Of a DNA stretch of 64,000 nt, positions 33,465 through 61,170 are shown piece after piece. Below the pieces are notes generated by a model that saw only the letters and a list, made by a program, of their open reading frames with translations, had not been told where the DNA came from and searched no databases. Where the stretch lies: NCBI RefSeq assembly GCF_902652985.1, contig NC_047017.1, positions 37,448,001 through 37,512,000 of the forward strand, in the 5' to 3' direction. Origin of the DNA: Pecten maximus (lineage: Eukaryota). Made by a program: the position numbers and the translations under genes. Position 1 is the first letter of the stretch. Every line of letters starts with the position of its first letter.

Positions 33465-34440
33465 TCAGTAACATCAGAAAGAAGAGGTACATGAATGTCA
33501 GTAAGAAGAGATATATAAAGGTCAGTAAAAAGATACATAAGTGTCAGTAAGATGAGATACATAAAGGTTAGTAAGAAAAGATACATAAAGGTCAGTAAGA
33601 AGAGATACATACATGGGAGAGTATGCCAGTCCAAGAGATTATGTGTTCTATAACCAGTCATGGAGAGTGTGTGTTCTGTAACCAGTCATGGAGAGTGTGT
33701 GTGTTCTGTAACCAGTCATGGAGAGTGTGTGTGTTCTGTAACCAGTCATGGAGAGTGTGTGTGTTCTATAACCAGTCATGGAGTGTGTGTGTGTGTTCTG
33801 TAACCAGTCATGGAGAGTGTGTGTTCTGTAACCAGCCCGGGAGAGTGTTCGTTCTATAACCAGTCAGGAGAGTATGTGTTGTATAACAAGTCCGAGAGAG
33901 TATGTGTTCTAAACCAAGTCCGAGAGAGTATGTGTTCTAAACCAAGTCCGAGAGAGTATGTGTTCTATAACAAGTCCGAGAGAGTATGTGTTCTATAACA
34001 AGTCCGAGAGTATGTGTTCTGTAACCAGCTCGGGAGAGTGTGTGTTCTATAATCAGCCCGGGAGAGTGTGCGTTCCCTTTACCAGTTCGGGAGAGTATGC
34101 GTTCTTTAACCAGATCGGCAGAGTGTGTGTTCTCTCACCAGCCCGGGAGAGTGTGTGTTCCTTCACCAGCCTGGAAGAGTATGTGTTCCCTCACCAGCCT
34201 GGGAGAGTATGTGTTCCCTTTCCAGCCTGGGAGAGTATGTGTTCCCTCACCAGCCTGGGAGAGTTTGTGTTCCCTCACCAGCCCGGGAGAGTATGTGTTT
34301 CCTTACCAGCCCAGGAGAGTATGCGTTTTCTTACCAGCCCGGGAGAGTATGCGTTCCCTTACCAGCCAAGGAGAGTATGCGTTTCCTTACCAGCCCGGGA
34401 GAGTATGCGTTTCCTTACTAGCCCGGGAGGGTATGCGTCT
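33465..34440 (+). repeat. Compound minisatellite: 24-bp unit (~5 copies) then ~28-32-bp gagagtatgtgttc...accagc units
   Basis: Tandem periodicity seen directly; the ORFs here are repeat artefacts. Confidence 0.9.
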
Positions 34441-34790
34441 GCTCTCTTAATAATTTTAAAATTACGCATTGGTAAGAACGTTATGCTATGATAATAATGC
34501 AGATTATTAAACAAGTTTAGTTTATTAGTGACATGAAATAGGCCCAGTTTAACGGACCAGATGTAATACTAATACTATATAACATGAAATATTGTGTGTA
34601 CTTTCTTTCGTAATATTGGAGTTTACAAAACAATTTCCATTATAATCTTAGTTAACAATAATGTAACAATAAACATACACAAAATATTCGTTGTTGCATA
34701 GCAACCAAGAAAACAATTAAAGTTTAGACACAAAATGAATGGTCCATGTTATACTGTAAAGAAAACAAATAATACATATAATTGACAAAA

Positions 34791-35927
34791 TTACCCACGC
34801 AAATATAGTCTCGGGTGATTGAGAAAAGTCACGATATTGTTCATTTCCTGCTGCAGTACGTCTTTATCCTTGCTGGAGAGCAGATTAACCCCGGTATGGA
34901 AGTACAGTGGAAGATTTCCCCTCTGGAGATAACCCAGCAGACGATACGTCATTGACTCCACACGGGTCGCCAATAGTTCCTGCTGCCATTCGGTATCTAA
35001 TGGGTGATACTCACACTCCCAGAACAGCACGTTCTTCAGGTGGTATGATGTTAGACCTTTTCTGGCATTATGATTGCACCATGTTTTTTCTTTTAAAGTC
35101 TTCAGAATACGAAGGCATTTCCTCCTGCATGTCCCGTTTTCGTCGATGCTTTCCAGAAGCTCCTTTTCACATGCAGCAAAAGACAATGTCCAATAAAATG
35201 GCGCCTTGGCTACAACATGTATCCCGATATCCTTGATACAGGAAATCTTTTGATCTGACGGCCATTCTCGGTCTTGTATTGGCATTGGCCAATTGAATTC
35301 ATTTTTAAATTCCACACTTGCTTCAATCATGGGGCACAAATCAATGCTGATTGGATAGCTAATATTCGGAAATGTTATGGAAAGTGTTATTGCTGGGGAA
35401 TCAGACATACGATCTGCCGTGACACGGTTTCTCATCTTCGGCTGGTTCACCGCCTCGGCTATAAGAGCCTTGAATCTTCTCTTAACTTTGATCGGCACTA
35501 TATCGTTATTAAACGTCATGCTCGCTCCACCATCGTTAAGTCTTTCGGAATCCCACCTTGCTACTAGACTGCCATATTCAATGAAACATTGGCCAGCAGG
35601 AGGGTTTGGTAGAGCAATCGCCGTGCTCTCTATATTTTTCTTAGATTTATCAAAGTCATAGTTTCTTGGACAAAATTTGTTTGACCAATACAGTTTCCCT
35701 ACATCGACGATTACACTGAAATCAAACTCGTCTGGCCTCTCTACTTTGAGATGTGTGTGGTAGCTCCCAACCTTCACTGTTGGGATCAGAAATCGGCTGT
35801 CTCTCTGATTAACATACCTTAGTAACTCGTCCACCAGTGGTAACACCTCTTTAGTAACCCTCTTTGTTTCGTCACGTCTCATTTTCACATTATTCTCATA
35901 AAAATGGTTCAGAATTGTGTTATCCAT
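34791..35927 (-). CDS. cGAS-like receptor (cGLR, Mab21-family nucleotidyltransferase), subtype A copy 1, 378 aa
   Basis: NTase signature KVGSYHTHLKVERPDEFDF, third acid ISIDLCP, VVAK..WTLSFAACEKELL, and Mab21_C TSYHLKNVLFWECE..P...W and LPLYFHTGVNLL. Uninterrupted ORF. Confidence 0.92.
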   Translation of the reverse strand: MDNTILNHFYENNVKMRRDETKRVTKEVLPLVDELLRYVNQRDSRFLIPTVKVGSYHTHLKVERPDEFDFSVIVDVGKLYWSNKFCPRNYDFDKSKKNIESTAIALPNPPAGQCFIEYGSLVARWDSERLNDGGASMTFNNDIVPIKVKRRFKALIAEAVNQPKMRNRVTADRMSDSPAITLSITFPNISYPISIDLCPMIEASVEFKNEFNWPMPIQDREWPSDQKISCIKDIGIHVVAKAPFYWTLSFAACEKELLESIDENGTCRRKCLRILKTLKEKTWCNHNARKGLTSYHLKNVLFWECEYHPLDTEWQQELLATRVESMTYRLLGYLQRGNLPLYFHTGVNLLSSKDKDVLQQEMNNIVTFLNHPRLYLRG

Positions 35928-38689: not shown

Positions 38690-38990
38690 CAAAGGGAAAC
38701 CGAATGTTGTTATGGCCAGAATTACTCAGAACGGCTGTGCGACAAATGTCACGTGACTGCTTCGTGTCAAGGTTTGTTTTCAATGTTCTAGAAGCATGAG
38801 GTAAGATTTGAAAAATACATCGGAGTTTCCAGTCCAAAATAAGCCATTCACGTGATAACTGATAATGATAAACAAGGAAGCTTTATCACACTGTTATGCA
38901 ATAGATTGTATATTTAGTGTAGGCAAAATCATGAGTTGTGACTTTAAAATAGAATGTAAGAACGGAAATGCGCCAGTCTTACATAGACAT
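38690..38990 (+). promoter_or_regulatory. Putative cGLR-B promoter and 5'-UTR intron
   Basis: IRF-like ggaaaccgaat, palindromic gtcacgtgac E-box/CLEAR motif, GAG|GTAAGA donor at 38801 and candidate acceptor cttacatAG at ~38986. Conserved before B1 and B2. Confidence 0.45.
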
Positions 38991-39030
38991 TGCCTGTGTA
39001 TGTTGGTATAGAGTTATATACAACTGAAAA

Positions 39031-39237
39031 ATGGATAACTATGCCCTCAACTGTTACTGTGATGAAAAGGTGTTGATGAAGAGAAACGAAACAAAAAGGA
39101 ATGTCAAGGAAGTGCTTCCTCTTGTCAATGAGATATTGAGATACGTAAATGAACGAGACAAACGTTTTCTGATACAACCACTGAGGATGGGCAGTTATGA
39201 TACGCACCTGAAGGTGGAGAGGGCAGACGAATTTTGA
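39031..39237 (+). pseudogene. Truncated cGLR subtype B (68 aa) cut by the duplication breakpoint
   Basis: Near-identical to the first 68 aa of 52592-53716; ends ...KVERADEF* where the sequence switches to the 24311 duplicate. Confidence 0.9.
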
Positions 39238-45934: not shown

Positions 45935-47390
45935 TCAGTAACATCAGAAAGAAGAGGTACATGAATGTCAGTAAAAAGGGATACATAAAGGTCAGTAAAA
46001 AGATACATAAGTGTCAGTAAGATGAGATGCATAAAGGTCAGTAAGATGAGATGCATAAAGGTCAGTAAGATGAGATACATAAAGGTCAGTAAGATGAGAT
46101 GCATAAAGGTCAGTAAGATGAGATACATAAAGGTCAGTAAGATGAGATGCATTAAGGTCAGTAAGATGTGATACATAAAGGTCAGTAAGATGAGATACAT
46201 AAAGGTCAGTAAGATGAGATACATAAAGGTCAGTAAGATGAGATACATAAAGGTCAGTAAGATGAGATACATAAAGGTCAGTAAGATGAGATACATAAAG
46301 GTCAGTAAGATGAGATACATAAAGGTCAGTAAGATGAGATACATAAAGGTTAGTAGGAAGAGATGCATAAAGGTTAGTAAGAAGAGATACATAAAGGTTA
46401 GTAAGAAGAAATACATAAAGGTCAGTAAGATGAGATGCATAAAGGTTAGTAAGAAGAGATACATAAAGGTCAGTAAGATGAGATGCATAAAGGTTAGTAA
46501 GGAGAGATGCATAAAGGTCAGTAAGATGAGATGCATAAAGGTTAGTAAGAAGAGATACATAAAGGTCAGTAAGATGAGATACATAAAGGTCAGTAAGATG
46601 AGATGCATAAAGGTTAGTAAGAAGAGATACATAAAGGTCAGTAAGATGAGATGCATAAAGGTTAGTAAGGAGAGATGCATAAAGGTTAGTAGGAAGAGAT
46701 GCATACATATCAGTAAGAACAGATACATACATGGGAGAGTATGCCAGTCCAAGAGATTATGTGTTCTATAACCAGTCATGGAGAGTGTGTGTTCTGTAAC
46801 CAGTCATGGAGAGTGTGTGTTCTGTAACCAGCCCGGGAGAGTATGTGTTCTTTAACAAGCCCGGAAGAGTATGTGTTCCCTTACCAGACCGAGAGAGTAT
46901 GTGTTCCCTTAACCAGCCTGGGATAGTATGTGTTCCCTTACCAGACCGAGAGAGTATGTGTTCCCTTAACCAGCCCGGGAGAGTATGTGTTCTTTAACCA
47001 GCCCGGGAGAGTATGTGTTCCCTTACCAGACCGAGAGAGTATGTGTTCCCTTACCAGACCGGGAGAGTATGTGTTCCCTTACCAGCCTGTGAGAGTATGT
47101 GTTCCATTTCCAGCCTGGGAGAGTATGTGCTCCCTTACCAGCCTGTGAGAGTATGTGTTCCCTTACCAGCCTGGGAGAGTATGTGTTCCCTTACCAGCCT
47201 GTGAGAGTATGTGTTCTTTAACCAGCCCGGGAGAGTATGTGTTCTTTAACCAGCCCGGGAGAGTATGTGTTCCCTTACCAGACCAAAAGAGTATCTGTTC
47301 CCTTACCAGACCAAAAGAGTATCTGTTCCCTTACCAGCCTGTGAGAGTATGTGTTCCCTTACCTGTCCGGGATATTATGCGCTCCCTTAC
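45935..47390 (+). repeat. Expanded compound minisatellite (24-bp unit, ~30 copies, then ~30-bp units)
   Basis: gtcagtaagatgagatacataaag array to ~46730, followed by gagagtatgtgttcccttaccagc units. Confidence 0.92.
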
Positions 47391-48850
47391 AGATTTACAG
47401 TTGTACCATCAGACAAAGGGTTATCTATCTGACTCGCACATCTCGTGATTTACAGTTGTAGAATGGGTCCTGGCAGTAGATATTTTAACTTCGTACATCT
47501 AACCATTCATAGTAAAAGTACTGTACATTCCAGCACCCTTTTTCGGTACATACAGCTCACGATTCTGTTATAGAGTAAGTTATAACCGCTTAGTAAAGGC
47601 GAGACGATAGCTTATACCGTAAAGTTCTGTTCTCTTTCTTATGTAATTATAGACGTGATAGAATAACATACATTTGTATATGGCATATTAACATATATAT
47701 TGAACTGGGAATAATATACCGAAACAAAGCACTTAAGTAAAACAATTGATCATTTTAAAGAGATATAATTTATTCAGATAAGGAATCGATAATGACATTG
47801 AAACAAATGTAATACAGAATGAATCTGGTCAACATCTACATTAAGATTATTTTCTGATTTTCTTATCATATATGACATAATTTTCAAATTAAAAATACAA
47901 AATATGTTAAAATAATATTAGATGTGCAGTTACTAGTATATTCATATTATATGTACATCAAATAAAACATATATACAGCTAATATACCGAAATAACCGTT
48001 GTCATGAGAACGTATAACAATGTAGTAAGCCGACCTTGTTATAAGTGCATATTAATTATCATGAAGCAAATACATTTTGTATATTGTTACAATGCATAAA
48101 TCAATATCACTACATTAAGATATCACTTCATCATCTGTATCTGTATTTTGGTGCAAAAACATATGATGCAGAAGTTGAATAAGATTTATACTTCGATTCT
48201 CAGCATTACAAATTGTGTTTACGTTACAACTACTACATGGAAATGATACCTAATCTGGCGGGATTTATTGTTTTTTAATATTTTAGTAATTACCATACTG
48301 TAAGTCACTTTATACTTATACTCTACTGCGCAAAATATATGCAATTGTAGGATTCGTTCGCCTATGTTTAAATATCTTTCGAAAGAACTATATATATTCT
48401 ATTATTAATATATGTTACCAAACTACCGGAAGTTATTTAAACTTTCGAGCGTAATTGAATAAATATTTCTTCTTGAAAATAGTGAGCTTTACAGGAGTCG
48501 ATTGTGTGATAAAAACGTAGTTAAAATACTTTGTATTAAATTTCATTTCTGGGAAAACATGTACAACGCCCATGGGCATTACACCTACAAATATTTCTTT
48601 GGCTGCTCAACAAATGACTTGATATTATTTGCTACCTGCTGCAGTACGTCTTTATCCTTGCTGGAGAGCAGATTGACCCCGGTATGGAAGTACAGCGGAA
48701 GATTCCCTCTCTGGAGATAACCCAACAAACGATATATCATTGTCCTCACCCGGGTGGCCAGAAGTTCCTGCTGCCATTCGGTATCGAATGGGTGATCCTC
48801 ACACTCCCAGAACAGTACGTTCTTCAGGTGGTATGATGTTAGACCTTTTC
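47391..48850 (-). repeat. Inverted repeat arm: B-type cGLR 3' coding end plus 3' flank (matches ~53460-54510 and ~58975-60320)
   Basis: Reverse complement matches the B1/B2 C-terminal codons, 3' UTR and first 55-bp satellite units. Confidence 0.88.
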
Positions 48851-49706
48851 TGGCATTATCAGTGCACCATATTTTTTCTTTCAATGTCTTCAGAATACGA
48901 AGGCATTTCCTCCTGCATGTCCCGTTTTCGTCGATGCTTTCTAGAAGCTCCTTTTCACATGCAGCAAAAGACAATGTCCAATAAAATGGCGCTTTGGCTA
49001 CTTCATGTATCCCGATATCCTTGATACAGGAAATCTTGTCACCTGACGGCCATTGAATACCCAGTCTTGGCCAATTGAATTCATTTTTAAATTCCAGTCT
49101 GGCTTCAATCATGGGGCACAAATCAATGCTGATTGGATAGCTAATATTCGGAAGTGTTATAGAAAGTGTTATTGCTGGGGACTCCGACAAACGATCTGCC
49201 GTGACACGGTTTCTCATCTTCGGCTGGTTCACCGCCTCGGCTACAAGAGCCTTGAATCTTCTCTTAACTTTGATCGGCACTATATCGTTATTAAACGTCA
49301 TGCTCGCTCCACCATCGTTAAGTCCTTCGGAATCCCACCTTGCTACTAGACTGCCAATTTTAGTGAAACATTGACCAGTAGGAGGGTTTGGTAGAGCAAT
49401 TGCCTTGCTCTCTATATTTTTCTTAAATTCATCAAAGCCATAGTTTCTTGGATAAGAGTTTGACCAATACAGTTTCCCTACATCGACGACTACACTGAAA
49501 TCAAACTCGTCAGGCCTCTTTACTTTGAGATGTGTGTGGTAGCTCCCAACTTTCTCTGTTTTTATCAGAAATCGGCTGTCTCTCTGATTAACATACCTTA
49601 GTAACTCGTCCACAAGTGGTAGCACCTCTTTAGTAACCCTCTTTGTTTCGTCACGTCTCATTTTCACATCATTCTCATAAAAATGGTTCAGAATTGTGTT
49701 ATCCAT
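48585..49706 (-). CDS. cGAS-like receptor (cGLR/Mab21), subtype A copy 2, 373 aa, with B-type C-terminus
   Basis: KVGSYHTHLKVKRPDEFDF, ISIDLCP, WTLSFAACE, SYHLKNVLFWECE; intact ORF. Confidence 0.92.
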   Translation of the reverse strand: MDNTILNHFYENDVKMRRDETKRVTKEVLPLVDELLRYVNQRDSRFLIKTEKVGSYHTHLKVKRPDEFDFSVVVDVGKLYWSNSYPRNYGFDEFKKNIESKAIALPNPPTGQCFTKIGSLVARWDSEGLNDGGASMTFNNDIVPIKVKRRFKALVAEAVNQPKMRNRVTADRLSESPAITLSITLPNISYPISIDLCPMIEARLEFKNEFNWPRLGIQWPSGDKISCIKDIGIHEVAKAPFYWTLSFAACEKELLESIDENGTCRRKCLRILKTLKEKIWCTDNARKGLTSYHLKNVLFWECEDHPFDTEWQQELLATRVRTMIYRLLGYLQRGNLPLYFHTGVNLLSSKDKDVLQQVANNIKSFVEQPKKYL

Positions 49707-52591
49707 TGCTATTTAGTAACGTTCATACAATCTGCCGAGGTATACCTTCACAATTCGGGAACAGACCGGTTGAATGTGAGTAGCAAGCACTGCGATAGCT
49801 AGGCCTATTGATATCCCGGGATTTCCGTCTAATTATAGAGCTGACAACTAAAGTGTATCTATTTTTAGCTCTTCTCTGCTTTCCAGAAACATGCAAGTAC
49901 ACTTTGTATATTGATTCAGTCAAAGTTTTTAATATAGACTGTCATCCGTAGGAGGTGTAGAAGTACGGAATGGTATCAATCTGTTAACAACGTGTTAAAC
50001 CGTTGAATACAGCGGTAAAGTCCCGTTCTGATCGTTTATATGAATATCCTCCTCTATGTTGAGGTCCCATTACAAAAGTATCGAGTTCCGAGAAAATCAA
50101 GCGGTTACTTTCATTTTCGCTTTTGGTAAATTCCTAACGAACGCTTACTATCTGGTCAATTATTACGTAGTTAACATATTAAACACGAAATAAACCCTTT
50201 CTTGTTTACCTGGTTAAACACGAGTTAAACCCCGTCGCGTCAAGTGATTATTACTTGGTTTAACACGCAGACACGAGGTTACATTGTTTGTGATTATGAT
50301 ATCAAAATAGTAAATTGTTCACAAAATGTCCCAACCCATATTGTCACGAAGACAATATATATACAACTCAACTTTACCGAAACGTAGCTAAATTAGATCT
50401 ATTGATAGTTTGGCCAAGCTAACCTGCAAAATGTACACAATTCATGTATAATTGGTATGATTTCATAAGTTTATACAAACAAAACGATCAAAATTGCACA
50501 TAGAAAATCGCAAACATAAAAAAATGTAAACATGAAGGGGTTAGTAAGTTTCTATTTATAGGACTTCACCTATATAGAGATTTGGAGTTCTGAGTAAATC
50601 CGGTGGTTTTATTTTCGATTTATGCTAGAATACTCATGGAAGAGATACCATCCATAAGCATTTATTGATTTAAGCAGAAAACTAATTCTGGAATAAATTA
50701 CAGGGATAAATTATTTGCATCAAAATTGACACATTTTTTTGCTATTCAAACTCATTTTCGCTTTTCATTTGTCATTACACAGACGCCTGCTTCTGATTTG
50801 TATTTAAAGAATTAAGAAGAAAAAGTATTAGGAGTAGGTGTTATTTTTCAATAAATACTAACCAGAAGCAGACGCCTGTGGTCATTAGCTCTAACTAGGT
50901 CACGGGCCCGACTATTACATATTACACCTTAGTCCGATACTTACAATTCATCATACCGCGTTCAATATAATTGTGATTTTGGTCAAATTCATTTCGCTTA
51001 AATCATAAAATGAAATTGAATAAAACACATATTACCAATTAAATAAAACGTATATTACCAATAAGATAAATCACACATTACGAATTAGATAAAACACATA
51101 CAATGTATTACCAATTAAATAATACACATATCATCAATTAAATAAAACACATATTTCCAATTAAATAAATAGATATAACCAATAAAATAAAACACATATT
51201 TCCAATTAAATAAATACAGATAACCAATTAAATAAAACACATACATGTATTACCAATTAAAACATTTTTCACCAAGTAAATAATCCCCATTGCATGTTAT
51301 TTTCTTTAGAAAGGAAGACAATCATTCACCTATTATGAGAATGCACTGAAGTGTAAAACTTTTTATCAAATTTTGAAAATCTCTAAGACATTATTGTCAT
51401 TCCGTTTTCAATCAATAAAGAAATACAATTATTTTTTGGACTGATTAATCAAACTGCATTATATAATAGGATTGATAAATTACATACAGGCTTGATTATG
51501 CCTGTTCGTTAAAATGCTCATTCCCTTCTCCTGTTTTTCTCCATCCAGACATCTTCATCAATGCCTCTATCTATTTCTTCTTTATATGTTTTATTTTTCC
51601 TTTTCTATTTCCTCTTTTCTACTTTCCTTTTCTCTCACTAAAAAATGAGAGAGAAAATATGAATTTCGTGGTGTATGGATAAAAATCATTTTGTATATTG
51701 ACACAAATATATTATTTTGTCATTGTTTAAAACTGTTGAAAAAAATAATAATAAAACATATTATCAATCAAATTAAAAACATTACCAATTAAATAAAACC
51801 TATTACCTGTAAAATAAAACACATATTACCAATTAAATAAAACACATATTACCAATTAAATAAAACACATATAACCAATTAAATAAAACACATATTTCCT
51901 AATAGATAAGACACATGGGTATGTGATTAAGTATATGTATTGTAAGGCTGTTAGAGTTATACTACTACATACCACTTACGGTACCCAGTAACTATTACTT
52001 ACAGTTACAATACTTCATCTGCTTAAATGATATTCTACAAACGGTAAAATGGAAGACTTGTCCAGAACCCGTTGAGAAATTTAGCAACATTGTTTTTTAA
52101 GACATTTAAGACGGATTGGTACTAAACATTCTGTTACATTTTGTATGTATTGATGGAAAGACACAAAACAAAAGAGCACATGTTCCAAAACACGCCGCAT
52201 TAAAAAACTCAACAAAGGGAAATCGAATGTTGTTATGGCCAGAATTACTCAGAACGGCTGTGCGACAAATGTCACGTGACTGCTTCGTGTCAAGGTTTGT
52301 TTTCAATGTTCTAGAAGCATGAGGTAAGATTTGAAAAATACATCGGAGTTTCAAGTCCAAAATTAGCCATTCACGTGATACTCCTGATAATGATAAACAC
52401 GGAAGCCTTATCATACTGTTATGCAATAGATTGTATATTTAGTGTAGGCAAAATCATGAGTTGTGACTTTAAAATAGAATGTAAATCCTCACTAATTATA
52501 TGGTATAGATATATGTTCTAGAACGTAAATACGCCAGTCTTACATAGACATTGCCTGTGTATGTTGGTATAGAGTTATATACAACTGAAAA

Positions 52592-53716
52592 ATGGATAAC
52601 TATGCCCTCAACTGTTACTGTGATGAAAAGGTGTTGATGAAGAGAAACGAAACAAAAAGGAATGTCAAGGAAGTGCTTCCTCTTGTCAATGAGATATTGA
52701 GATACGTAAATACACGAGACAAACGTTTTCTGATACAACCACTGAGGATGGGCAGTTATGATACGCACCTGAAGGTGGAGAAGGCAGACGAATTTGACTA
52801 CAATGTCATCGTCGATGTCGGTAAGCTGATATGGGGATCTGGAAAGACCAGATACTACGGATTTAACGACACCAGGGATCAAGTAGTGGAGAAAAAAGGA
52901 TACGCATTACCGAGTCCGTCAGTTGGCCAGTGTTTTATTGAAATCGGTTCCTTAAAGAAGAAATGGGAGGCTGATGGACTTGAAGACGGAGTGTCGAGCA
53001 TGACATTTGACAATGACATAGTTCCAATCAAGGTCAAAAGAAGATTCAAATCACTTGTCGGTGAAGCTGTTAATCAGCCGAAATTCAGAAATATGATAAC
53101 AACCGACAAAATATCAGCTTCTCCTGCTACCACACTTTCTGTGCAGTTCCCAGACATTCCATATCCAATCAGCATTGATCTGTGCCCGATGATCGAAGGT
53201 CAATTAGAATTCAAACCAGAGTTCAATTGGCCTAGACCAAATAGTCAGTGGCCATCACGACAGAAGAAGTCGACCATAGCTAAAATTGGCGTGAATGAAA
53301 TAGCAAAGGCGCCATTTTATTGGACACTGTCGTTCGCTGCCTGCGAAAAGGAGTTATTGGAAGGAATTGACATTGGAGGAACACGTAGAAAGAAAAGCCA
53401 GCGGATCATGAAACGACTAAAAGACGAAGTATGGTGTCCACCTGGATTAAAGAAAGTCCTTACATCATACCACCTGAAGAACGTGCTGTTCTGGGAGTGT
53501 GAGGATCACCCATTTGATGCCGAATGGCAGAAGGAACTTCTGGCCACCCGGGTGAGGGCAATGACATATCGTTTGTTGGGTTATCTCCAGAGGGGAAATC
53601 TTCCGCTGTACTTCCATACCGGGGTCAATCTGCTCTCCAGCAAGGATAAAGACGTACTGCAGCAGGTAGCAAAAAATATCAAGTCATTTGTTGACCAGCC
53701 AGAGAAATATTTTTAG
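52592..53716 (+). CDS. cGAS-like receptor (cGLR/Mab21), subtype B copy 1, 374 aa
   Basis: RMGSYDTHLKVEKADEFDY, ISIDLCP, EIAK..WTLSFAACEKELL, TSYHLKNVLFWECE, LPLYFHTGVNLL. Confidence 0.92.
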   Translation: MDNYALNCYCDEKVLMKRNETKRNVKEVLPLVNEILRYVNTRDKRFLIQPLRMGSYDTHLKVEKADEFDYNVIVDVGKLIWGSGKTRYYGFNDTRDQVVEKKGYALPSPSVGQCFIEIGSLKKKWEADGLEDGVSSMTFDNDIVPIKVKRRFKSLVGEAVNQPKFRNMITTDKISASPATTLSVQFPDIPYPISIDLCPMIEGQLEFKPEFNWPRPNSQWPSRQKKSTIAKIGVNEIAKAPFYWTLSFAACEKELLEGIDIGGTRRKKSQRIMKRLKDEVWCPPGLKKVLTSYHLKNVLFWECEDHPFDAEWQKELLATRVRAMTYRLLGYLQRGNLPLYFHTGVNLLSSKDKDVLQQVAKNIKSFVDQPEKYF

Positions 53717-54451
53717 GTGTAATACCCATGGGCGTTGTACATATTTTACCAGAAATGAAATTTAATATAAAGTATTTTAACTACGTTTTTATCAACCAAT
53801 CGACTCCTGTAAATCACAATATTTTCAAGAAGAAATATTTATTCAATTACGATCAGACTCGCTCGAAAGTTAAAAAATATTGAAATAACTACCGGTAGTT
53901 TGGTAACTGATATTTATATATTTATGTACATATAATATGAATATGCTAGTAACTGCACATCTAATATCATTTAAACATATTTTGTATTTTTAAGTTGAAA
54001 ATTATGTCATATATGATAAGAAAATCAGTGAATAATCTTAATGTAGATGTTGAGTGCTGGTTGACCAGATTTCATTCTGTATTACATTTGTACTTGATGT
54101 TTCGATGTCATTATCGATTCCTTATCTGAATAAATTATATCTCTTTAAAATGATCAACTGTTTTACTGTAGTGTTTTGTTTCAGTATATTATACCCAGTT
54201 CAATATACGTGTTTTATGTTAATATACCATATACAAATGTATGTTATTCGATCACGTCTATAATTACATTAGAAAGATAATAGAACTTTATGGTATAAGC
54301 TATCGTCTCGCCTTTACTAAGCGGTTATGTCTTACTCTATAACAGAATCGTGAGCTGTATGTACCGAAAAAAGGTTGCTGGAATGTCCAGTACTTTTACA
54401 ATGAATGGTTAGATGTACGAAGTTAAAAATATATACTGCCAGGGCCCATTC

Positions 54452-54765
54452 TACAACTGTAAATCACGAGATGTGCGAGTCCGATAGATACCCCTTTGTC
54501 TCACTCTACAACTGTAAATCACGAGATGTGTGAGTCCGATAGATACCCCTTTGTCTCACTCTACAACTGTAAATCACGAGATGTGTGAGTCCGATAGATA
54601 CCCCTTTGTCTCATGGTACAATTGTAAATCACGAGATGTGCGAGTCCAATAGATACCCCTTAGTCTCATTGTACAACTGTAAATCACGAGATGTGTGAGT
54701 CCGATAGATACCCCTTTGTCTCGTGGTACAATTGTAAATCACGAGATGTGTGAGTCCGATAGATA
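54452..54765 (+). repeat. 55-bp tandem repeat (~6 copies)
   Basis: tacaactgtaaatcacgagatgtgtgagtccgatagatacccctttgtctcactc unit. Confidence 0.9.
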
Positions 54766-55066
54766 TCATGCCATATCCTTTATCTAAAATGTAAATCTAA
54801 AGTGTATGTCGTTAAAAAGACACTGACATGTACCATCCTACAACTGTAACAAATCACCAACATAACTTTCTTTTCAGTCTAGCACTCGGGAAATACTGAA
54901 GAGACTTTTCAAAAACCGACAAAAAAAAAATAACGAAACGTAATTTTAAGTGGAAATAGATAAGACGAGCGGAAATACTAACAATGGTATAGATTTTCCT
55001 TGATAACCTTGAAAAAACACACGAAAAGACACCGTGTGTTCAGAAAGGTAAAGCGTCTTCTGCTTC

Positions 55067-55245
55067 ATCGACGACGCCCGTCATACAAATCTAGGTCACG
55101 GCGACACCCGTCATACAAATCTAGTTCACGACGACGCCCGTCATACAAATCTAGGTCACGACGACACCCGCCATACAAATCTAGGTCACGACTACGCCCG
55201 TCATAAAAATCTAGGTCACGACGACGCCCATCATACAAATCCAGG
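55067..55245 (+). repeat. 30-bp tandem repeat (copy at ~61472-61680)
   Basis: cgacgacgcccgtcatacaaatctaggtca units. Confidence 0.88.
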
Positions 55246-55714
55246 CAAACTCGAGGGTAACTTGACTTGCACTTTCTTCAGAAAATTTTTATTATTTTAT
55301 CAAAGCATCTTTAATAAATATGTTTTTTCACGTCGCCTTTCGTCTGATGTCAACCAACAGTCATTCTATTAGATTTTGCATATTCCTTTTGATGCTAGTT
55401 GTGCTATATTTCCTTTATTTTTATATCAATTAAATATGGTCGCTTTCTAACGTTCTGACTGTGGCTGTGTCTTCTTACAAATACTGTCGTACTGTGGTTC
55501 CGCTTTTATTCTGGTTGTGCAACACCACCTTGCTGTATTGTCAAGAACAGAGGTCAATAGCACTGTTTTTCAATTTCCGCTTCCACAAACATTGATCCTA
55601 ACACGAGATAATGAAACCAATTTGTTGAAAATAATAGCAATTGTTTCGCAATAATATAATGTGTAGGGAATATGGTGAAAGGTCAAGGTCGTCGTGGTAA
55701 AAACTGTCTAGCAT

Positions 55715-55982
55715 AATGATCCAACGATTCAATGATCCTCCAATGATGCAATGATCCAACGACCCAATGATGCAATGATCCAACGACCCAATGATGCAAT
55801 GATCCAACGACACAATGATACAATATTATGATACAATGAAACAATGATCCAACGACCCAATGATGCAATGATACAATGATCCAACGACCCAATGATACAA
55901 TGAAACAATGAACCAATGATCCAATGACACAATTATACAATGGAACAATGAAGCAATGATCCAAAGATCCAATTATACAATG
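55715..55982 (+). repeat. Degenerate 8-bp-based (caatgatN) microsatellite (copy at ~62150-62460)
   Basis: caatgatg/caatgatc/caacgacc units. Confidence 0.85.
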
Positions 55983-58105
55983 TCCCTTGTTCAAAATCCA
56001 ATGTTTATCCCTCTCTGGTTGAACACTGTGACGTAATATTATTGAGACTTAACTCCGAAAGGAACACTTCATCTTATCTTCTACGTTTAGATATTTATCT
56101 AGTTACATGTAGTTATGTATTTAGTACAGTAATTGGCATTTGAACAAGTAATGTATGCCATATCTAGATATGCTGATAAATCGTGTATTCTTATACATGA
56201 CCAATGGTATTTCCCGTTCCAGTCTCACAAATGAATTTTTGATTTCAAAGTCAAACAGAATAAACGTCATAAACACCGTATTGTCACCTCTTAGCTACAC
56301 CGTGGAGAAGGTTGACGGACATGGAGGGCACAGGACGTGCGTTCCCTTGCATCATGCGACGCGGCGACACACTCTGGAGAGAAGCGTGAATATGGCGAGA
56401 GATACAAGCAAGAACTTTTTTTCAATCAGATCTCAGAGAGAGATATCGTTTGCTTGTCTAGTTCTGATCAATTTATTTTCGCACGTTCAGTTAAAACAAA
56501 TCGTTGTACAGTGTTGATTTCAGCGAAGAGTTCGCGATTTTCTCAGGCTAATACACGTTAATGACGCGATTGAAGACGAAGGATGGTTGTTTACGTTTTC
56601 ACTGCTAAAAACGGCGAGCCTGTGACGGTTTCCCATACTTTATTAACTTCGTCTGTGATATATATGGCTTGGTCGATGTCCCCAGAATATTTCTGTTTGT
56701 GTTATTTGTCTGTTTTCTGTGTCAAAGCCATGAAATAGCGAAAAAATTGGGGAAGGAGTAATGAGGGAGAATAGCGGGAGCTGGCGACGGTGTTTGTTTG
56801 GATTGAGGTATTTGCCGAAACGGAAATGAATAGAAGTGAAAGACGTTTATCGCAGTAATTATAGCGTTTATATAACTCTTTCCACTAGGTTTGACAGGTT
56901 AACATATGCATTTATTGCCAAGTCTTACATTTGAAAATCTATCCATTCACAACAAATTGTATGACGTTACAGAAACTAAAAAAAAAAATACAAAAAAAAA
57001 CCGTAACGTCGACTATGTGTTGTATTTGTGCAATGTCAATGATCTTTAAAACCAGTGAATGGATTGATCATCTAATTAAAAAAAAAAAAAAACGAAAATT
57101 TCTTCTCAAATATCATGGAAGATACATGTATGACAGTCAGTGGAGATACATTTTGAGGATTCATTTGAAAATGTCATCAATGTGATTTCAAAATGGAAGA
57201 CGAGAGATATTGTTTATGACATTGTCACCGCTACTGTGTATGAACACCATGATGATGACCAAGAAAATGTATAGTAATTATGTTTTACATCTTTTTCTTT
57301 TTCGTGACTGATAACGAACCACGAAAACTAACACAACAAATGTTATCTCTAAACTATTAGATTATGTGGAGCATCCACGGAAGTCTGTACCACAAGCTAT
57401 GCCTATTTAACAGCTTGGTAAACCTTTAACAGTTCGTATCACGCAGTAAGAGGCTGTCACGGCGCATTACCTATACATTGTTAGCATTGTCATCAAATTC
57501 CAGTATCAGTCATCAGAAGAACCGTTTTCTTTTAGGCTGACGCCATTTAAGGAGAAACTTTAAATAACGTGTAGCCGATTTGTTTCTGATCAGGTGAACG
57601 ATGGCAATCAAGTGCTTAAATGATTGGGACAGACAGTATTTTCAAAATCAAAGCTGTAGTCCACCTTGGTACTAAACAGTTTGTTACATTTTGTATGTAT
57701 TGATGGAATGACACAAAACAAAAGAGCACATGTTCCAAAACACACCGCATTAAAAAACTCAACAAAGGGAAACCGAATGTTGTTATGGCCAGAATTACTC
57801 AGAACCTCTGTGCGACAAATGTCACGTGACTGCTTCGTGTCAAGGTTTGTTTTCAATGTTCTAGAAGCATGAGGTAAGATTTGAAAAATACATCGGAGTT
57901 TCCAGTCCAAAATTAGCCATTCACGTGATACACCTGATAATGATAAACAGGGAAGCTTTATCACATTGTTATGCAATAGATTGTATATTTAGTGTAGGCA
58001 AAATCATGAGTTGTGACTTTAAAATAGAATGTAAGAACGGAAATGCGCCAGTCTTATGTAGAAATCGCCTGTGTATGTTGGTTTATAGTTCTATACAACT
58101 GAAAA

Positions 58106-59230
58106 ATGGATAACAATGCCCTCAACTGTTACTGTGATGAAAAGGTGTTGATGAAGAGAAACGAAACAAAAAGGAATGTCAAGGAAGTGCTTCCTCTTGT
58201 CAATGAGATATTGAGATACGTAAATGCACGAGACAAACGTTTTCTGATACAACCACTGAGGATGGGCAGTTATGATACGCACCTGAAGGTGGAGAAGGCA
58301 GACGAATTTGACTACAATGTCATCGTTGATGTCGGTAAGCTGATATGGGGACCTGGAAAGACGAGATACTACGGATTTAACGACACCAGAGATCAAGTGG
58401 TTGGGAAAAATGGATACGCATTACCGAGTCCTCCTGTTGGTCAGTATTTTATTGAAATCGGTTCCATAAAGAAGAAATGGGAGGCTGATGGACTTGAAGA
58501 CGGAGTGTCGAGCATGACATTTGACAATGACATAGTTCCAATCAAGGTCAAAAGAAGATTCAAATCACTTGTCGGTGAAGCTGTTAATCAGCCGAAATTC
58601 AGAAATATGATAACAACCGACAGAATATCAGCTTCTCCTGCTACCACACTTTCTGTGCAGTTCCCAGACATTCCATATCCAATCAGCATTGATCTGTGCC
58701 CGATGATCGAAGGTCAATTAGAATTCAAACCAGAGTTCAATTGGCCTAGACCAAATAGTCAGTGGCCATCACGACAGAAGAAGTCGACCATAGCTAAAAT
58801 TGGCGTGAATGAAATAGCAAAGGCGCCATTTTATTGGACACTGTCGTTCGCTGCCTGCGAAAAGGAGTTATTGGAAGGACTTGACATTGGAGGAACATGT
58901 AGAAAGAAAAGCCAGCGGATCATGAAACGACTAAAAGACGAAGTATGGTGTCCACCTGGATTAAAGAAAGTCCTTACATCATACCACCTGAAGAACGTGC
59001 TGTTCTGGGAGTGTGAGGATCACCCATTTGATGCCGAATGGCAGCAGGAACTTCTGGCCAAACGGGTGAGGGCAATGACATACCGTTTGTTGGGTTATCT
59101 CCAGAGGGGAAATCTTCCGCTGTACTTCCATACCGGGGTCAATCTGCTCTCCAGCAAGGATAAAGACGTACTGCAGCAGGTAGCAAAAAATATCAAGTCA
59201 TTTGTTGACCAGCCAGAGAAATATTTGTAG
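58106..59230 (+). CDS. cGAS-like receptor (cGLR/Mab21), subtype B copy 2, 374 aa
   Basis: Same catalytic and Mab21 motifs; 14 aa differences from B1 by manual comparison. Confidence 0.92.
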   Translation: MDNNALNCYCDEKVLMKRNETKRNVKEVLPLVNEILRYVNARDKRFLIQPLRMGSYDTHLKVEKADEFDYNVIVDVGKLIWGPGKTRYYGFNDTRDQVVGKNGYALPSPPVGQYFIEIGSIKKKWEADGLEDGVSSMTFDNDIVPIKVKRRFKSLVGEAVNQPKFRNMITTDRISASPATTLSVQFPDIPYPISIDLCPMIEGQLEFKPEFNWPRPNSQWPSRQKKSTIAKIGVNEIAKAPFYWTLSFAACEKELLEGLDIGGTCRKKSQRIMKRLKDEVWCPPGLKKVLTSYHLKNVLFWECEDHPFDAEWQQELLAKRVRAMTYRLLGYLQRGNLPLYFHTGVNLLSSKDKDVLQQVAKNIKSFVDQPEKYL

Positions 59231-60253
59231 GTGTAATACCCATGGGCGTTGTACATGTTTTTTTCCCAGAAATGAAATTTAATACAAAGTATTTTAACTA
59301 CGTTTTTATCAACCAATCGACTCAATTACGATCAGACTCGATCGAAAGTTAAAATATATTGAAATAGCTACCGTAGTTTGGTAACTGATATTTATAATAG
59401 AATATATATAGCTCTTTCAAAAGCTATTTAAACGTTGGCGAACGAATCCTACAATTACACTGTACATATATTTTGCGAAGTAGAATATAAGCGAAGATAA
59501 AGTAACTTACAGTATTGTTAATTTAACTTCTGCATCATATGTTTTTGAACCAAAATACAGATACAGATGATGAAGTGATGTATTATTGTAGTCATATTAA
59601 TCTATACATTGTAACAATATATAGGCTTCATGATAATTAATATGCACCTATAACAAGGTCGGCTTTCTACATTGTTATACGTTATCATGACAACGGTTAT
59701 TTCGGTATATTAGCTGTATATATGTTTTATTTGATGTACATATAATATGAATATACTAGTAACTGCACATCTAATATCATTTTAACATATTTTGTATTTT
59801 TAATTTGAAAATTATGTCATATATGATAAGAAAATCAGAAGATAATCTTAATATAGAGGTTGAGTCCTGGTTGACCAGATTTCATTCTGTATTACATTTG
59901 TACTTGATGTTTCAATGTCATTATCGATTCCTTATCTGAATAAATTATATCTCTTTAAATGATCAACTGTTTTACTTTAGTGCTTTGTTTCAGTATATTA
60001 TCTCCAGTTCAATATACGTGTTTTAATATACCATATACAAATGTATGTTATTCTATCACGTCTATAATTACATAAGAAAGAGAATAGAACTTTATGGTAT
60101 AAGTTATCGTCTCGCCTTTACTAAGCGGTTATGTCTTACTCTATAACAGAATCGTGAGCTGTATGTACTGAAAAAAGGTGCTGGAATGTCCAGTACTTTT
60201 ACTATGAATGGTTAGATGTACGAAGTTAAAAATATATACTGCCATGACCCATT

Positions 60254-61170
60254 CTACGACTGTAAATCACGAGATGTGTGAGTCCGATCGATACCCCTTT
60301 GTCTCACTCTACAACTGTAAATCACGAGATGTGTGAGTCCGATCGATACCCCTTTGTCTCACTCTACAACTGTAAATCACGAGATGTGTGAGTCCGATCG
60401 ATACCCCTTTGTCTCACTCTACAACTGTAAATCACGAGATGTGTGAGTCCGATCGATACCCCTTTGTCTCACTCTACAACTGTAAATCACGAGATGTGTG
60501 AGTCCGATAGATGTCCCTTTGTCTCACTCTACAACTGTAAATCACGAGATGTGTGAGTCCGATCGATACCCCTTTGTCTCACTCTACAACTGTAAATCAC
60601 GAGATGTGTGAGTCCGATAGATGTCCCTTTGTCTCACTCTACAACTGTAAATCACGAGATTTGTGAGGCCGATAAATACCCCTTTGTCTCATGGTACAAC
60701 TGTAATTCACGAGATGTGTGAGTCCGATCGATACCCCTTTGTCTCACTCTACAACTGTAAATCACGAGATGTGTGAGTCCGATAGATGTCCCTTTGTCTC
60801 ACTCTACAACTGTAAATCACGAGATTTGTGAGGCCGATAAATACCCCTTTGTCTCATGGTACAACTGTAATTCACGAGATGTGTGAGTCCGATAAATACC
60901 CATTTGTCTCGTTGTACAACTGTAAATCACGAGATTTGTGAGGCCGATAAATACCCCTTTGTCTCATGGTATAACTGTAAATCACGAGATGTGTGAGTCC
61001 GATAAATACCCCTTTGTCTCACTCTACAACTGTAAATCACGAGATTTGTGAGGCCGATAAATACCCCTTTGTCCCATGGTACAACTGTTAATGACGAGAT
61101 GTGCAAGTCCGATAAATACTCCTTTGTCTCATAGTACAATTGTAAATCACGAGATTTGTGAGTCCGATAG
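60254..61170 (+). repeat. 55-bp tandem repeat (~17 copies)
   Basis: Same unit as 54452-54765, expanded. Confidence 0.9.

What the first reader, a model, noticed from the sequence alone, without database searches (positions are those of the whole stretch)
47391..54510. Chimeric cGLR-A2 and a potentially invertible cassette: inverted gene conversion swaps C-terminus and 3' UTR between subtypes
Seen: A1 ends QQEMNNIVTFLNHPRLYLRG with its own 3' flank (34441-34790). A2 ends QQVANNIKSFVEQPKKYL like B (QQVAKNIKSFVDQPEKYL/F) and is followed by ~1.2 kb of B-type flank down to the 55-bp satellite. The 5' parts of A2 and B1 and their shared promoter (~48850-53460) are therefore bracketed by >1-kb inverted repeats that begin inside both ORFs in frame. 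A2's flank contains one block missing from B1 and another missing from B2, so the donor predates those deletions or is a third B copy. Even A1 is near-identical to B from SYHLKN to DVLQQ, implying repeated homogenisation. Inference: crossover in the arms would flip the ~4.6-kb core and re-pair N-terminal sensor/catalytic halves with alternative tails and UTRs, giving recombinational receptor diversification.
Basis: partly seen in the sequence, partly recalled or inferred. Interest (0 to 1): 0.78.

Follow-up and report, generated by a model that had tools for sequence, protein, structure and literature searches.

The report
Scallop cGLR genes share copied tails
One of four neighbouring scallop cGAS-like immune-sensor genes has had its last part and the DNA behind it overwritten by an inverted copy from its neighbour, which is ordinary gene-to-gene copying and not a demonstrated flipping switch.

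Summary
The window has four intronless Mab-21/cGLR genes: A1, A2 (- strand) and B1, B2 (+ strand). A and B differ at saturation over their first ~290 codons (synonymous difference 0.82-0.84). A2 47392-48848 is an inverted copy of the B 3' end: the last ~260 coding bases, ~1.2 kb of flank and ~1.3 units of the 55-bp satellite. It is about 93% identical to B1 and B2 and abuts the 28-bp satellite at 47391. Contigs from independent samples bridge both ends of the arm, and an RNA library covers the A2 ORF and part of the B-type 3' flank.

A 337-site test puts the recent exchange point at 48762-48782 (0 of 10,000 permutations). An older ~205-bp conversion block is shared by all four genes. In Ylistrum balloti the A and B orthologues also share a species-specific C-terminus (68/69 identical against 62% before it), so C-terminal concerted evolution recurs in scallops.

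The invertible-cassette reading is not supported. The arms differ by 7%, with at most 77-93 identical bases in a row. They are not homogenised, and a flip would swap at most 8 residues. Orientation could not be tested. The scan noted cGLR conversion at another locus of this genome.

The parts
34791..35927 (-). cGLR-A1 ORF (378 aa), with an A-type tail of its own
   Evidence: ORF. Pfam Mab-21 (2.9e-18) and Mab-21_C (2.4e-22).
34848..35053 (-). Older conversion block in A1 (ORF alignment columns 878-1083). It is 82-97% identical to B per 60-nt window, where the flanking ORF is about 56-70% identical.
   Evidence: One search gives the window identities. One search gives pS for A1-B of 0.21-0.25 here against 0.84 in the 5' part. 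One search gives 17/206 differences against 320/865 (p = 4.7e-18). The coordinates are converted from alignment columns.
34439..34832 (-). A1-specific last ~14 codons and 352-bp flank, up to the 28-bp satellite. About 34556-34762 of it is a dispersed repeat.
   Evidence:(a): nothing else in the window matches it; 40 further genomic matches to query positions ~118-324. One search shows the sequence.
46753..47390 (.). 28-bp satellite array that abuts the outer end of the A2 arm. A homologous array lies at 33611-34438 next to A1.
   Evidence: TRF and the repeat finder families D4, D6 and D7. One search shows the junction sequence.
47392..48848 (-). A2 arm: an inverted copy of the B 3' end. It holds ~260 coding bases, 1,193 bp of flank and ~1.3 units of the 55-bp satellite at 47392-47465.
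   Evidence: Contigs of an independent sample bridge 47391/47392 (X6, 47318-47543) and 48848 (X6, 48675-49220; X18, 48786-49763).
47392..48772 (-). Recent B-to-A2 tract. Its inner end lies between 48762 and 48782.
   Evidence: of 337 informative sites, 277 of the 305 upstream are A-like and 31 of the 32 downstream are B-like. Max chi-square is 154.2, reached by 0 of 10,000 permutations.
48585..49706 (-). cGLR-A2 ORF (373 aa), a chimera of an A-type 5' part and a B-type tail
48849..53452 (.). 4,604-bp core between the arms. It holds the 5' parts of A2 and B1 and a 2,885-bp spacer with 23-76-bp tandem repeats and a stretch of very high contig depth at about 50700-50899.
   Evidence: pair I1; TRF; depth 2138-3433 in the bin 50700-50899.
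52592..53716 (+). cGLR-B1 ORF (374 aa)
53453..54520 (+). B1 arm. It lacks a 438-450-bp block that A2 and B2 both have.
58106..59230 (+). cGLR-B2 ORF (374 aa)
58967..60323 (+). B2 arm. It lacks a 38-bp and a 109-bp block, and 10,118 nt separate it from the A2 arm.
   Evidence: (pair I2).
39031..39234 (+). B0 stub: the first 68 codons of a B gene, cut by the junction of the 14.9-kb tandem duplication (24311-39234 against 39231-52795)
   Evidence: 61% identity to A2 residues 1-71, with one TGA; b.

Best explanation
A and B are two old subtypes of an intronless cGAS-like receptor (Mab-21 family) gene. They sit head to head in a scallop genome and were later amplified by tandem duplication into A1, a B0 stub, A2, B1 and B2.

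The last third of the Mab-21_C domain (about 205 bp, LTSYHLKN...DVLQQ) is repeatedly overwritten between the inverted paralogues by interlocus gene conversion. It therefore stays similar while the rest of the genes is saturated with differences.

In A2 one such event did not stop inside the gene. Copying started in the already similar block, between 48762 and 48782. It ran through the B stop codon, about 1.2 kb of B 3' flank and about 1.3 units of the 55-bp satellite. The end was then joined without homology to the 28-bp satellite. This replaced A's own last codons and short flank.

Inferred mechanism: a break near the A 3' end or the satellite was repaired by one-ended strand invasion into B and synthesis along it (SDSA/BIR-like), and finished by end joining.

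The by-product is an imperfect inverted repeat of 1.07-1.46 kb around a 4.6-kb core. A2 also gained a B-type tail and a B-type 3' UTR. The repeat could in principle allow a rare NAHR inversion, but nothing shows that it flips, and a flip would change little.

Shown: the mosaic structure, its breakpoints, its presence in other samples, and concerted evolution in a second genus. Inferred: the repair pathway, the order of events, and any regulatory effect of the new 3' UTR.
For: Identity step inside the ORF:
- A against B is 44-85% identical per 60-nt window up to column 900, then 82-100%. In the last window A2-B is 93-94% and A1-B is 56-57%.
- At synonymous sites, pS for A-B is 0.82-0.84 in columns 1-876. 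In columns 877-1083 it is 0.11-0.14 for A2-B and 0.21-0.25 for A1-B. A1-A2 dS rises from 0.10 to 0.30 in that block.
- The breakpoint lies at 48762-48782, with 0 of 10,000 permutations reaching the statistic.

The similarity runs on into non-coding flank up to the satellite. This flank occurs nowhere else in the 918-Mb assembly: all 24 matches lie in this locus.

The transfer is non-reciprocal. B1 and B2 both keep the B tail, and only A1 keeps an A tail. A1's tail still fits the family pattern and ends like the Ylistrum A orthologue, so it is the older state.

In the arms, A2 is outgroup to B1+B2: 47 sites support this, against 21 and 14 for the alternatives, in 969 columns.

Cross-species evidence:
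- N-terminal tree: A clade 87/99 and B clade 99/98.
- C-terminal tree: Ylistrum A+B pair 100/98.
- AU tests: the C part rejects the A clade (p = 0.0011) and the N part rejects the Ylistrum A+B pair (p = 2.3e-11).
- Ylistrum A and B are 62% identical before the block and 68/69 identical in it. They share 8 species-specific residues in the 87 C-terminal columns against 1 in the 296 N-terminal columns.

The structure is real. Contigs of other samples bridge 47391/47392 and 48848 and run through the A2-only block (X6, 47961-48704). An RNA library has contigs on the A2 ORF and on 47978-48151 with 0 differences.
Against: - The distal end of the tract has no homology partner (55-bp satellite against 28-bp satellite), so this is not a classical two-ended conversion. 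The repair pathway is my inference.
- The order of events is not clean. The arm looks older than the B1/B2 split (7% against 3.9%). Yet B0 groups with B1 (15 sites against 7 and 5), and the two 15-kb units differ by only 0.25% in the DHHC block and by 6.5% in the A ORF. Later homogenisation, or an origin from diverged haplotypes, must be assumed.
- Only one other species (Ylistrum) has both an A and a B C-terminus among the proteins found. The Mizuhopecten A-type model stops exactly at the block boundary, and I could not fetch its DNA.
- The groups for the AU tests were named after I had seen the first trees.
- RNA evidence comes from assembled contigs of a metatranscriptomic library, so DNA carry-over cannot be excluded.
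Confidence: 0.8

Rival explanations
1. Invertible cassette: crossover between the arms flips the 4.6-kb core (or 10.1 kb with B2) often enough to act as a diversification or regulation device. A weaker form is that the inversion segregates as a polymorphism.
For: Inverted repeats of more than 1 kb do bracket the core, and they start in frame in both ORFs. Exchange between the inverted paralogues has recurred. Inverted repeats of paralogous genes do drive recurrent inversions elsewhere: the Saccharomyces flip/flop region (PMC9731477, abstract) and human inversions mediated by inverted repeats (PMC3961182, passages).
Against: - The arms are 6.8-7.1% diverged, with indels of 7-450 bp and at most 77 or 93 identical bases in a row. 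The yeast repeats are described as almost identical 4-kb sequences, and a human example places its likely breakpoints in 782 bp of 99.9% identity.
- There is no sign of ongoing homogenisation in three other samples: 3 of 8 listed variants are B-type and 5 are not.
- The tails that would be swapped differ at 8 of 81 residues (my count).
- No ORF of 120 aa or more lies in the core apart from A2, B1 and one 128-aa ORF antisense to the B1 start, so no recombinase gene is there.
- The two 'opposite strands' joints (49001/49006 joined to 53299/53294) coincide with the end of the laid stretch, and their loose ends read as B sequence.
Confidence: 0.08
2. Old palindrome: A and B arose by an inverted duplication that included the flank. 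A2 keeps the ancestral arm, which arm-to-arm conversion has maintained, and A1 lost it secondarily.
For: The 28-bp satellite adjoins both A copies, and over half of the A1 flank is a dispersed repeat that could be a later insertion. B0 groups with B1, which would make the A1/A2 split younger than the arm.
Against: - A1's last 19 codons are a genuine family tail (NNI..FL..P..YL pattern) that ends like the Ylistrum A orthologue. They are as far from B as the 5' part is (56-57% nucleotide identity). A deletion or insertion would not create such a tail.
- The A/B split predates the three scallop genera. A 93%-identical non-coding flank would therefore need continuous homogenisation, yet the arms have drifted to 7%.
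- In Ylistrum the A and B tails after the block differ (11/17 identical), as expected if conversion is normally confined to the block.
Confidence: 0.06
3. A1 and A2 are alleles. The 14.9-kb 'tandem duplication' would then be two haplotypes of a highly heterozygous bivalve placed in series by the assembler, so the A-type and B-type tails are allelic states of one gene.
For: Divergence between the units forms a gradient from 0.25% to 6.5%, with large indels in the satellites. That pattern resembles allelic variation. I did not lay reads on the junction or on A1.
Against: The junction at 39231-39234 is seamless, has ATTT microhomology and creates a B stub that ends in a stop. The window contains no N. 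This reading would change the gene count but not the conversion finding.
Confidence: 0.08
4. Assembly artefact: the B-type flank was wrongly attached to A2.
For: Paralogous repeats and satellites are typical places for mis-joins.
Against: In sample X6 (a different study from the best DNA holder), contigs cover 47318-47543, 47961-48704, 48675-49220 and 49225-49760 with 1-6 differences each. X18 has 48786-49763. These contigs carry A2-specific letters and the A2-only block.
Confidence: 0.02

Closest known systems
Interlocus (ectopic) gene conversion and partial-gene concerted evolution between inverted paralogues, for example human RHD/RHCE
   Same: Both are non-reciprocal overwriting of part of one paralogue by a neighbour in opposite orientation. 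Both leave a sharp step in identity that includes synonymous sites, and both give trees that group by species for the converted part only.
   Different: The recent A2 tract leaves the gene and ends in a satellite with no homology on the far side. It is also longer (about 1.38 kb) than the few hundred bases usually quoted (PMC3961182 discussion). The RH comparison is recalled. Of PMC4824203 I saw only the search listing and the start of the abstract.
Saccharomyces chromosome XIV flip/flop region (Salzberg et al. 2022, PMC9731477; abstract read)
   Same: Paralogous genes form an inverted repeat at both ends of a segment, and the repeat is homogenised again and again across a genus.
   Different: There the repeats are almost identical 4-kb sequences and both orientations are documented. 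Here the arms are 1.07-1.46 kb and 93% identical, only about 205 bp is homogenised repeatedly, and no second orientation was seen.
Human polymorphic inversions mediated by inverted repeats (Aguado et al. 2014, PMC3961182; passages read)
   Same: The architecture is inverted duplicates that contain parts of paralogous genes. In that paper one inversion (HsInv0241) exchanges the first exons of AQP12A and AQP12B.
   Different: The breakpoints there lie in stretches of very high identity (for example 782 bp at 99.9%). Here the longest identical run is 77-93 bp.
cGLR radiation in bivalves (Li et al. 2023 preprint, PMC9980059; passages read)
   Same: The protein family is the same. The best solved relative is 'cGAS-like receptor 1', 8gjy_A, at E = 4.9e-32. 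Bivalves are reported there to carry many cGLR genes.
   Different: The passages I read speak of radiation and gene numbers, not of conversion between paralogues. 'Scallop' has 0 occurrences in the main text. Its Table S1 could list these genes, but supplements were closed.

Membership tests
cGLR / Mab-21 nucleotidyltransferase family | Mab-21 nucleotidyltransferase domain followed by the Mab-21 C-terminal domain | tested here: met
   All four ORFs match PF03281 (E from 8.7e-15 to 2.9e-18) and PF20266 (E from 8.5e-21 to 3.7e-24), above the curated cut-offs. The best PDB match is 8gjy_A, 'cGAS-like receptor 1', at 4.9e-32.
cGLR / Mab-21 nucleotidyltransferase family | Intact catalytic motifs: G-S, an acidic pair [DE]-h-[DE], and a third acidic residue | tested here: met
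   G54, D66, E67, F68, D69 and D196 (A1 numbering) are invariant in 33 aligned relatives, and S55 is at least 90% conserved. GSY...DEFD aligns with the same letters of 8gjy_A. Which residues are catalytic is recalled from cGAS literature, not tested.
cGLR / Mab-21 nucleotidyltransferase family | Ligand-activated synthesis of a nucleotide second messenger | not testable with these tools
   This needs biochemistry.
Interlocus gene conversion | Abrupt change of paralogue identity that includes synonymous sites | tested here: met
   pS is 0.82-0.84 in the 5' part and 0.11-0.25 in the block. Fisher p = 2.7e-24 and 4.7e-18. The breakpoint test gives 0 of 10,000 permutations.
Interlocus gene conversion | Phylogenetic incongruence between converted and unconverted parts | tested here: met
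   Trees. AU tests give p = 0.0011 and 2.3e-11.
Interlocus gene conversion | Non-reciprocal: the donor keeps its sequence | tested here: met
   B1 and B2 keep the B tail and flank. The A-type tail survives only in A1.
Interlocus gene conversion | Homology on both sides of the tract (classical double-strand-break repair) | tested here: not met
   This applies to the recent A2 tract, whose outer end joins the 55-bp satellite to the 28-bp satellite with no shared sequence beyond about 1 nt. The older ~205-bp block lies wholly inside homologous coding sequence.
Inverted-repeat (NAHR) flip-flop region or invertible cassette | Inverted repeats bracket the segment | tested here: met
   Arms 47392-48848 against 53453-54520 and 58967-60323.
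Inverted-repeat (NAHR) flip-flop region or invertible cassette | Both orientations exist | tested here: inconclusive
   Only assembled contigs were available, all under 1.1 kb among those listed and shorter than the arms. The two strand-changing joints are artefacts of the stretch end.
Inverted-repeat (NAHR) flip-flop region or invertible cassette | Arms kept nearly identical by ongoing exchange | tested here: not met
   The arms are 7.1% and 6.8% diverged and the longest identical runs are 77 and 93 bp. In other samples 3 of 8 listed arm variants are B-type.
Inverted-repeat (NAHR) flip-flop region or invertible cassette | A dedicated recombinase or signal sequences (for a programmed switch) | tested here: not met
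   No further ORF of 120 aa or more lies in or beside the core, except one 128-aa ORF antisense to the B1 start. No Rfam family is found in 33000-62000. Smaller or spliced genes were not excluded.

The most novel reading that the evidence does not exclude
The head-to-head cGLR pair is a long-lived flip-flop locus. The conserved ~205-bp conversion island has the same boundaries in two scallop genera. It would mark recurrent crossover as well as conversion between the inverted genes, so that the core (and in this species the larger A2-B1/B2 segments) segregates in both orientations in scallop populations. The identical C-lobe of A and B would be kept because the two sensors must share a partner or pair with each other.
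Probability: 0.1. Interest if true: 0.6.

Novelty: new member of a known kind. Interest (0 to 1): 0.36.

Why it matters
cGLRs are a recently recognised and, in bivalves, strongly expanded family of innate immune sensors (PMC9980059). How the paralogues diversify is little described. My library searches for 'cGLR' with 'gene conversion', and two related searches, found no paper on it.

This locus shows a modular pattern. The catalytic and ligand-facing 290 codons of two subtypes stay far apart for longer than the scallop genera have existed. The last ~70 codons are kept alike by recurrent conversion. Once, the exchange also carried a whole 3' UTR from one subtype to the other. That gives a natural experiment: A1 and A2 have the same sensor half but different tails and UTRs.

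It is also a practical warning for cGLR phylogenies and orthology calls built on full-length alignments. The mechanism itself is ordinary, and the attractive 'invertible receptor cassette' idea has no support so far.

Tried and rejected
- Purifying selection as the cause of the similar C-terminus. Rejected: synonymous sites drop from 0.83 to 0.11-0.25, and Ylistrum A and B share 8 species-specific residues there.
- The shared flank as a transposable element inserted twice. Rejected: it occurs only at A2, B1 and B2, and the similarity is continuous from inside the ORF.
- A third B copy as donor. Rejected for this assembly: 9 matches among 82 scored candidates, of which only the four genes and the stub are close.
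- The 'opposite strands' joints as evidence of inversion. Rejected: they sit at 53294/53299, the end of the laid stretch. The 54-59 letters placed on A2 fall in a block where A2 and B are about 86% alike. The loose ends read as B sequence. I could not see the contig letters themselves.
- Concerted evolution in mussels. In N- and C-part trees of 33 proteins, the Mytilus and unnamed rows gave no clear species-wise regrouping, and I did not pursue it.
- Microhomology at the outer junction. A TGTAA motif occurs twice, 4 nt apart, but at most about 1 nt is shared at the join itself. I draw nothing from it.
- Rfam (0 matches in 33000-62000) added nothing.
I used protein alignments and trees and Pfam and PDB coordinates instead. 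By Pfam coordinates the block is roughly the last 70% of Mab-21_C, and all catalytic motifs lie before it.
- Supplements of the papers were not opened.


Full report
WHAT IS THERE.
The window is G000:C3:37448001-37512000 of a 918,306,378-base assembly in 3,983 contigs. The nearest named proteins are 'protein mab-21-like 3' of the scallops Ylistrum balloti (77% identity to A2) and Mizuhopecten yessoensis. The genome is therefore a pectinid. The assembly size and contig number match my recollection of the king scallop reference; this is recalled, not tested.

Between 34.4 and 61.2 kb lie four uninterrupted ORFs of 373-378 codons: A1 34791-35927(-), A2 48585-49706(-), B1 52592-53716(+) and B2 58106-59230(+). 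All four match Pfam Mab-21 and Mab-21_C. Their best solved relative is 'cGAS-like receptor 1', 8gjy_A, at E = 4.9e-32. The G-S and DEFD motifs and a later Asp are conserved in 33 relatives. Calling them cGLR genes is therefore justified. Activity is untested.

LARGER ARCHITECTURE.
A self-comparison shows a 14.9-kb tandem duplication, 24311-39234 against 39231-52795. Each unit carries a DHHC palmitoyltransferase gene, satellites, an A gene and the spacer up to codon 68 of a B gene. Unit 1 therefore ends in a B0 stub (39031-39234; 68 codons, then a stop) at a seamless junction with ATTT microhomology. A second duplication made B1 and B2 (52116-57642 against 57666-63989). A and B stand head to head, and the A2 and B1 start codons are 2,885 bp apart.

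- The A2 stretch 47392-48848 is an inverted copy of B1 53453-54520 and B2 58967-60323.
- It covers the last ~260 coding bases, 1,193 bp of flank and 74 nt (about 1.3 units) of the 55-bp satellite that follows B1 and B2.
- It ends sharply against the 28-bp satellite at 47391.
- In the arm, A2 differs from B1 at 72/1009 aligned sites (7.1%) and from B2 at 88/1290 (6.8%). B1 and B2 differ at 39/1013 (3.9%).
- In the rest of the ORF, A and B differ at 317-320 of 865 sites.
- B1 lacks a 438-450-bp block that A2 and B2 share. B2 lacks a 38-bp block that A2 and B1 share. B2 also lacks a 109-bp block that lies inside the B1 deletion, so it is seen in A2 only.
- A1 instead has its own last codons and a 352-bp flank (34439-34832) that matches nothing else in the window. 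About 200 bp of that flank is a dispersed repeat with 40 other genomic matches.
- The B-type flank occurs only at A2, B1 and B2 in the whole assembly. No third B gene exists.

IT IS EXCHANGE, NOT CONSTRAINT.
- The synonymous difference (pS) between A and B is 0.82-0.84 in columns 1-876. In columns 877-1083 it is only 0.21-0.25 for A1-B and 0.11-0.14 for A2-B.
- A1-A2 dS rises from 0.10 in the 5' part to 0.30 in that block. This is expected if A2's block was replaced from B after A1 and A2 had separated.
- 337 sites have A1 different from B1=B2, with A2 matching one of them. Upstream of the best breakpoint 277 of 305 are A-like. Downstream 31 of 32 are B-like.
- The breakpoint lies between 48782 and 48762. 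Max chi-square is 154.2, reached by 0 of 10,000 permutations.
- There are thus two layers. The older layer is a ~205-bp block (LTSYHLKN to DVLQQ) shared by all four genes, with both ends inside coding sequence. The younger layer is a ~1.38-kb tract that starts inside that block and runs out of the gene.

DIRECTION AND DONOR.
A1's tail still follows the family pattern and ends like the Ylistrum A orthologue. It is as far from B as the 5' part is (56-57% nucleotide identity). It is therefore the old A state, and A2's tail is derived from B. B1 and B2 keep their tails, so the transfer was non-reciprocal. In 969 three-way columns of the arm, 47 sites unite B1+B2, 21 unite A2+B2 and 14 unite A2+B1.

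OTHER SCALLOPS.
- In a tree of the N-terminal 296 columns, the A genes group with Ylistrum P0003 and Mizuhopecten P0009 (87/99). The B genes group with Ylistrum P0007 and Mizuhopecten P0005/P0008 (99/98). The A/B split is therefore older than these genera (repeated with 33 proteins).
- In the tree of the C-terminal 87 columns, the two Ylistrum proteins pair (100/98).
- AU tests reject the A clade for the C part (delta lnL 28.0, p = 0.0011) and reject the Ylistrum pair for the N part (delta lnL 98.0, p = 2.3e-11). The groups were named after I had seen.
- Ylistrum A and B are 180/288 identical before the block, 68/69 identical in it and 11/17 after it. They share 8 residues found in no other sequence within the 87 C-terminal columns, against 1 in the 296 N-terminal columns.
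- The same block, with nearly the same two boundaries, is thus overwritten independently in a second genus.
- My inference is a self-sustaining island. Only this stretch is similar enough to prime exchange, and each exchange renews that similarity.
- Limits: only one further species is informative. The Mizuhopecten A model (P0009, 286 aa) stops exactly at the boundary.

IS THE A2 FLANK A MISASSEMBLY?
No. I laid contigs of two DNA samples (X2, X5), one probable RNA sample (X6) and one RNA library (X18) on 47300-53299. All four come from studies other than that of the best holder.
- X6 has contigs at 47318-47543 (across the satellite junction) and at 47961-48704 (through the A2-only block into the ORF).
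- X6 also has 48675-49220 (across the inner boundary) and 49225-49760. All four X6 contigs carry 1-6 differences each.
- X18 has 48786-49763, and 47978-48151 with 0 differences.
- X18 shows no depth in 49900-52299 except at a very high-depth stretch (50700-50899). It has contigs on B1 from 52455.
This fits transcription of A2 with at least ~600 nt of B-type 3' UTR. Contigs cannot prove a single transcript, and DNA carry-over is possible. A conserved AATAAA lies at +810 (A2), +412 (B1) and +708 (B2). The A2-only block adds two more signal-like hexamers at +305 and +315.

THE INVERTIBLE-CASSETTE INFERENCE.
The geometry is right, and such loci exist. One is the yeast flip/flop region bounded by homogenised paralogous genes (PMC9731477, abstract). 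Others are the human inversions mediated by inverted repeats (PMC3961182, passages). Here, however:
- The arms are 7% diverged, are interrupted by indels of 7-450 bp, and share at most 77 (B1) or 93 (B2) identical bases in a row.
- In three other samples, 3 of the 8 listed arm variants are B-type and 5 are new A2-specific letters. The arm evolves on its own. The tool did not show 65 further variant rows.
- No recombinase-like ORF lies in the core.
- By my count from the alignment, the arms encode tails that differ at 8 of 81 residues. A flip would create almost no new protein.
- The two 'opposite strands' joints sit at the last bases of the laid stretch and are explained by B contigs running off its end.
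Orientation itself remains untested, because every contig listed in table 8 is shorter than an arm.

HOW IT MOST LIKELY HAPPENED (inference).
A break at the satellite-proximal 3' end of A2 was resected into the conserved block. The end invaded the inverted B copy. Synthesis then ran through the B tail and flank into the 55-bp satellite, where it dissociated. The end was joined to the 28-bp satellite without homology. This is conversion-like at one end and end-joining at the other, so it fails the two-sided-homology criterion of classical conversion.

UNRESOLVED: THE ORDER OF EVENTS.
The arm looks older than the B1/B2 split. Yet B0 groups with B1 (15 sites against 7 and 5). The two 15-kb units differ by 13/5124 in the DHHC block, 1.9% and 3.6% in the spacer and 6.5% in the A ORF. 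That ORF has dN/dS of about 0.55. Three explanations remain open: later homogenisation between the direct repeats, an origin from two diverged haplotypes, or, less likely, haplotypes assembled in series.

EARLIER NOTES OF THE SCAN.
Other notes of this scan describe the same stepwise divergence (s1-802943) and the co-duplicated cGLR/DHHC cassette (s1-802649). At another locus of this genome they report cGLR paralogues that overwrite each other (s1-802620, s1-802836). I did not test the latter two.

VERDICT.
This is a real, expressed chimeric cGLR gene made by non-reciprocal copying from an inverted neighbour, on top of a recurrent C-terminal conversion island shared by scallop genera. It is a new example of a known process in a family where my searches found no report of it. 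The invertible-cassette reading is unsupported.

Noticed in passing
window 24311-39234 and 39231-52795: Divergence between the two 15-kb tandem units is a gradient. It is 13/5124 mismatches in the DHHC block, 1.9% and 3.6% in the two halves of the A-B spacer, and 6.5% in the A 5' ORF (dS 0.10, dN/dS about 0.55). The coding A gene is thus more diverged than the neighbouring non-coding DNA.
   Followed up: partly
window 39031-39234: This is a B0 stub: the first 68 codons of a B-type cGLR with its upstream region intact. It is cut by the duplication junction (ATTT microhomology) and ends in a stop. Over 642 aligned bases it is closer to B1 (2.0%) than to B2 (3.3%).
   Followed up: partly
window ~34556-34762: The 3' flank of A1 contains a dispersed repeat of about 190 bp. 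It has 40 further matches (67-93% identity) on many contigs of the genome.
   Followed up: no
window 28396-29415 and 43320-44453: Two intronless DHHC palmitoyltransferase ORFs (Pfam PF01529, E = 3.4e-26, scanned for the second copy only) are duplicated together with the cGLR pair. The duplicated block that holds them is about 99.5% identical.
   Followed up: no
window 48181-48342: One contig of DNA sample X5 skips these 162 bp of the A2 arm, with only 28 letters on the shorter side. It may be a deletion allele that overlaps the A2-only 109-bp block.
   Followed up: no
window 50700-50899: Contig depth in this bin is 40-70 times that of its neighbours in both DNA samples, and many loose ends fall here. 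A high-copy element probably sits in the A2-B1 spacer.
   Followed up: no
window 48606 and 48627: The contigs of X2 and X5 carry the B-type letter at both of these places in the A2 tail, and the X6 contig at 48606 only. The changes would be E to D and N to K. These two A2-specific residues of the reference are therefore polymorphic or private.
   Followed up: partly
protein P0009 (Mizuhopecten yessoensis A-type model, 286 aa): The annotated protein ends exactly at the 5' boundary of the conversion block. This could be a truncated gene, an annotation problem or an assembly problem at an inverted repeat.
   Followed up: no
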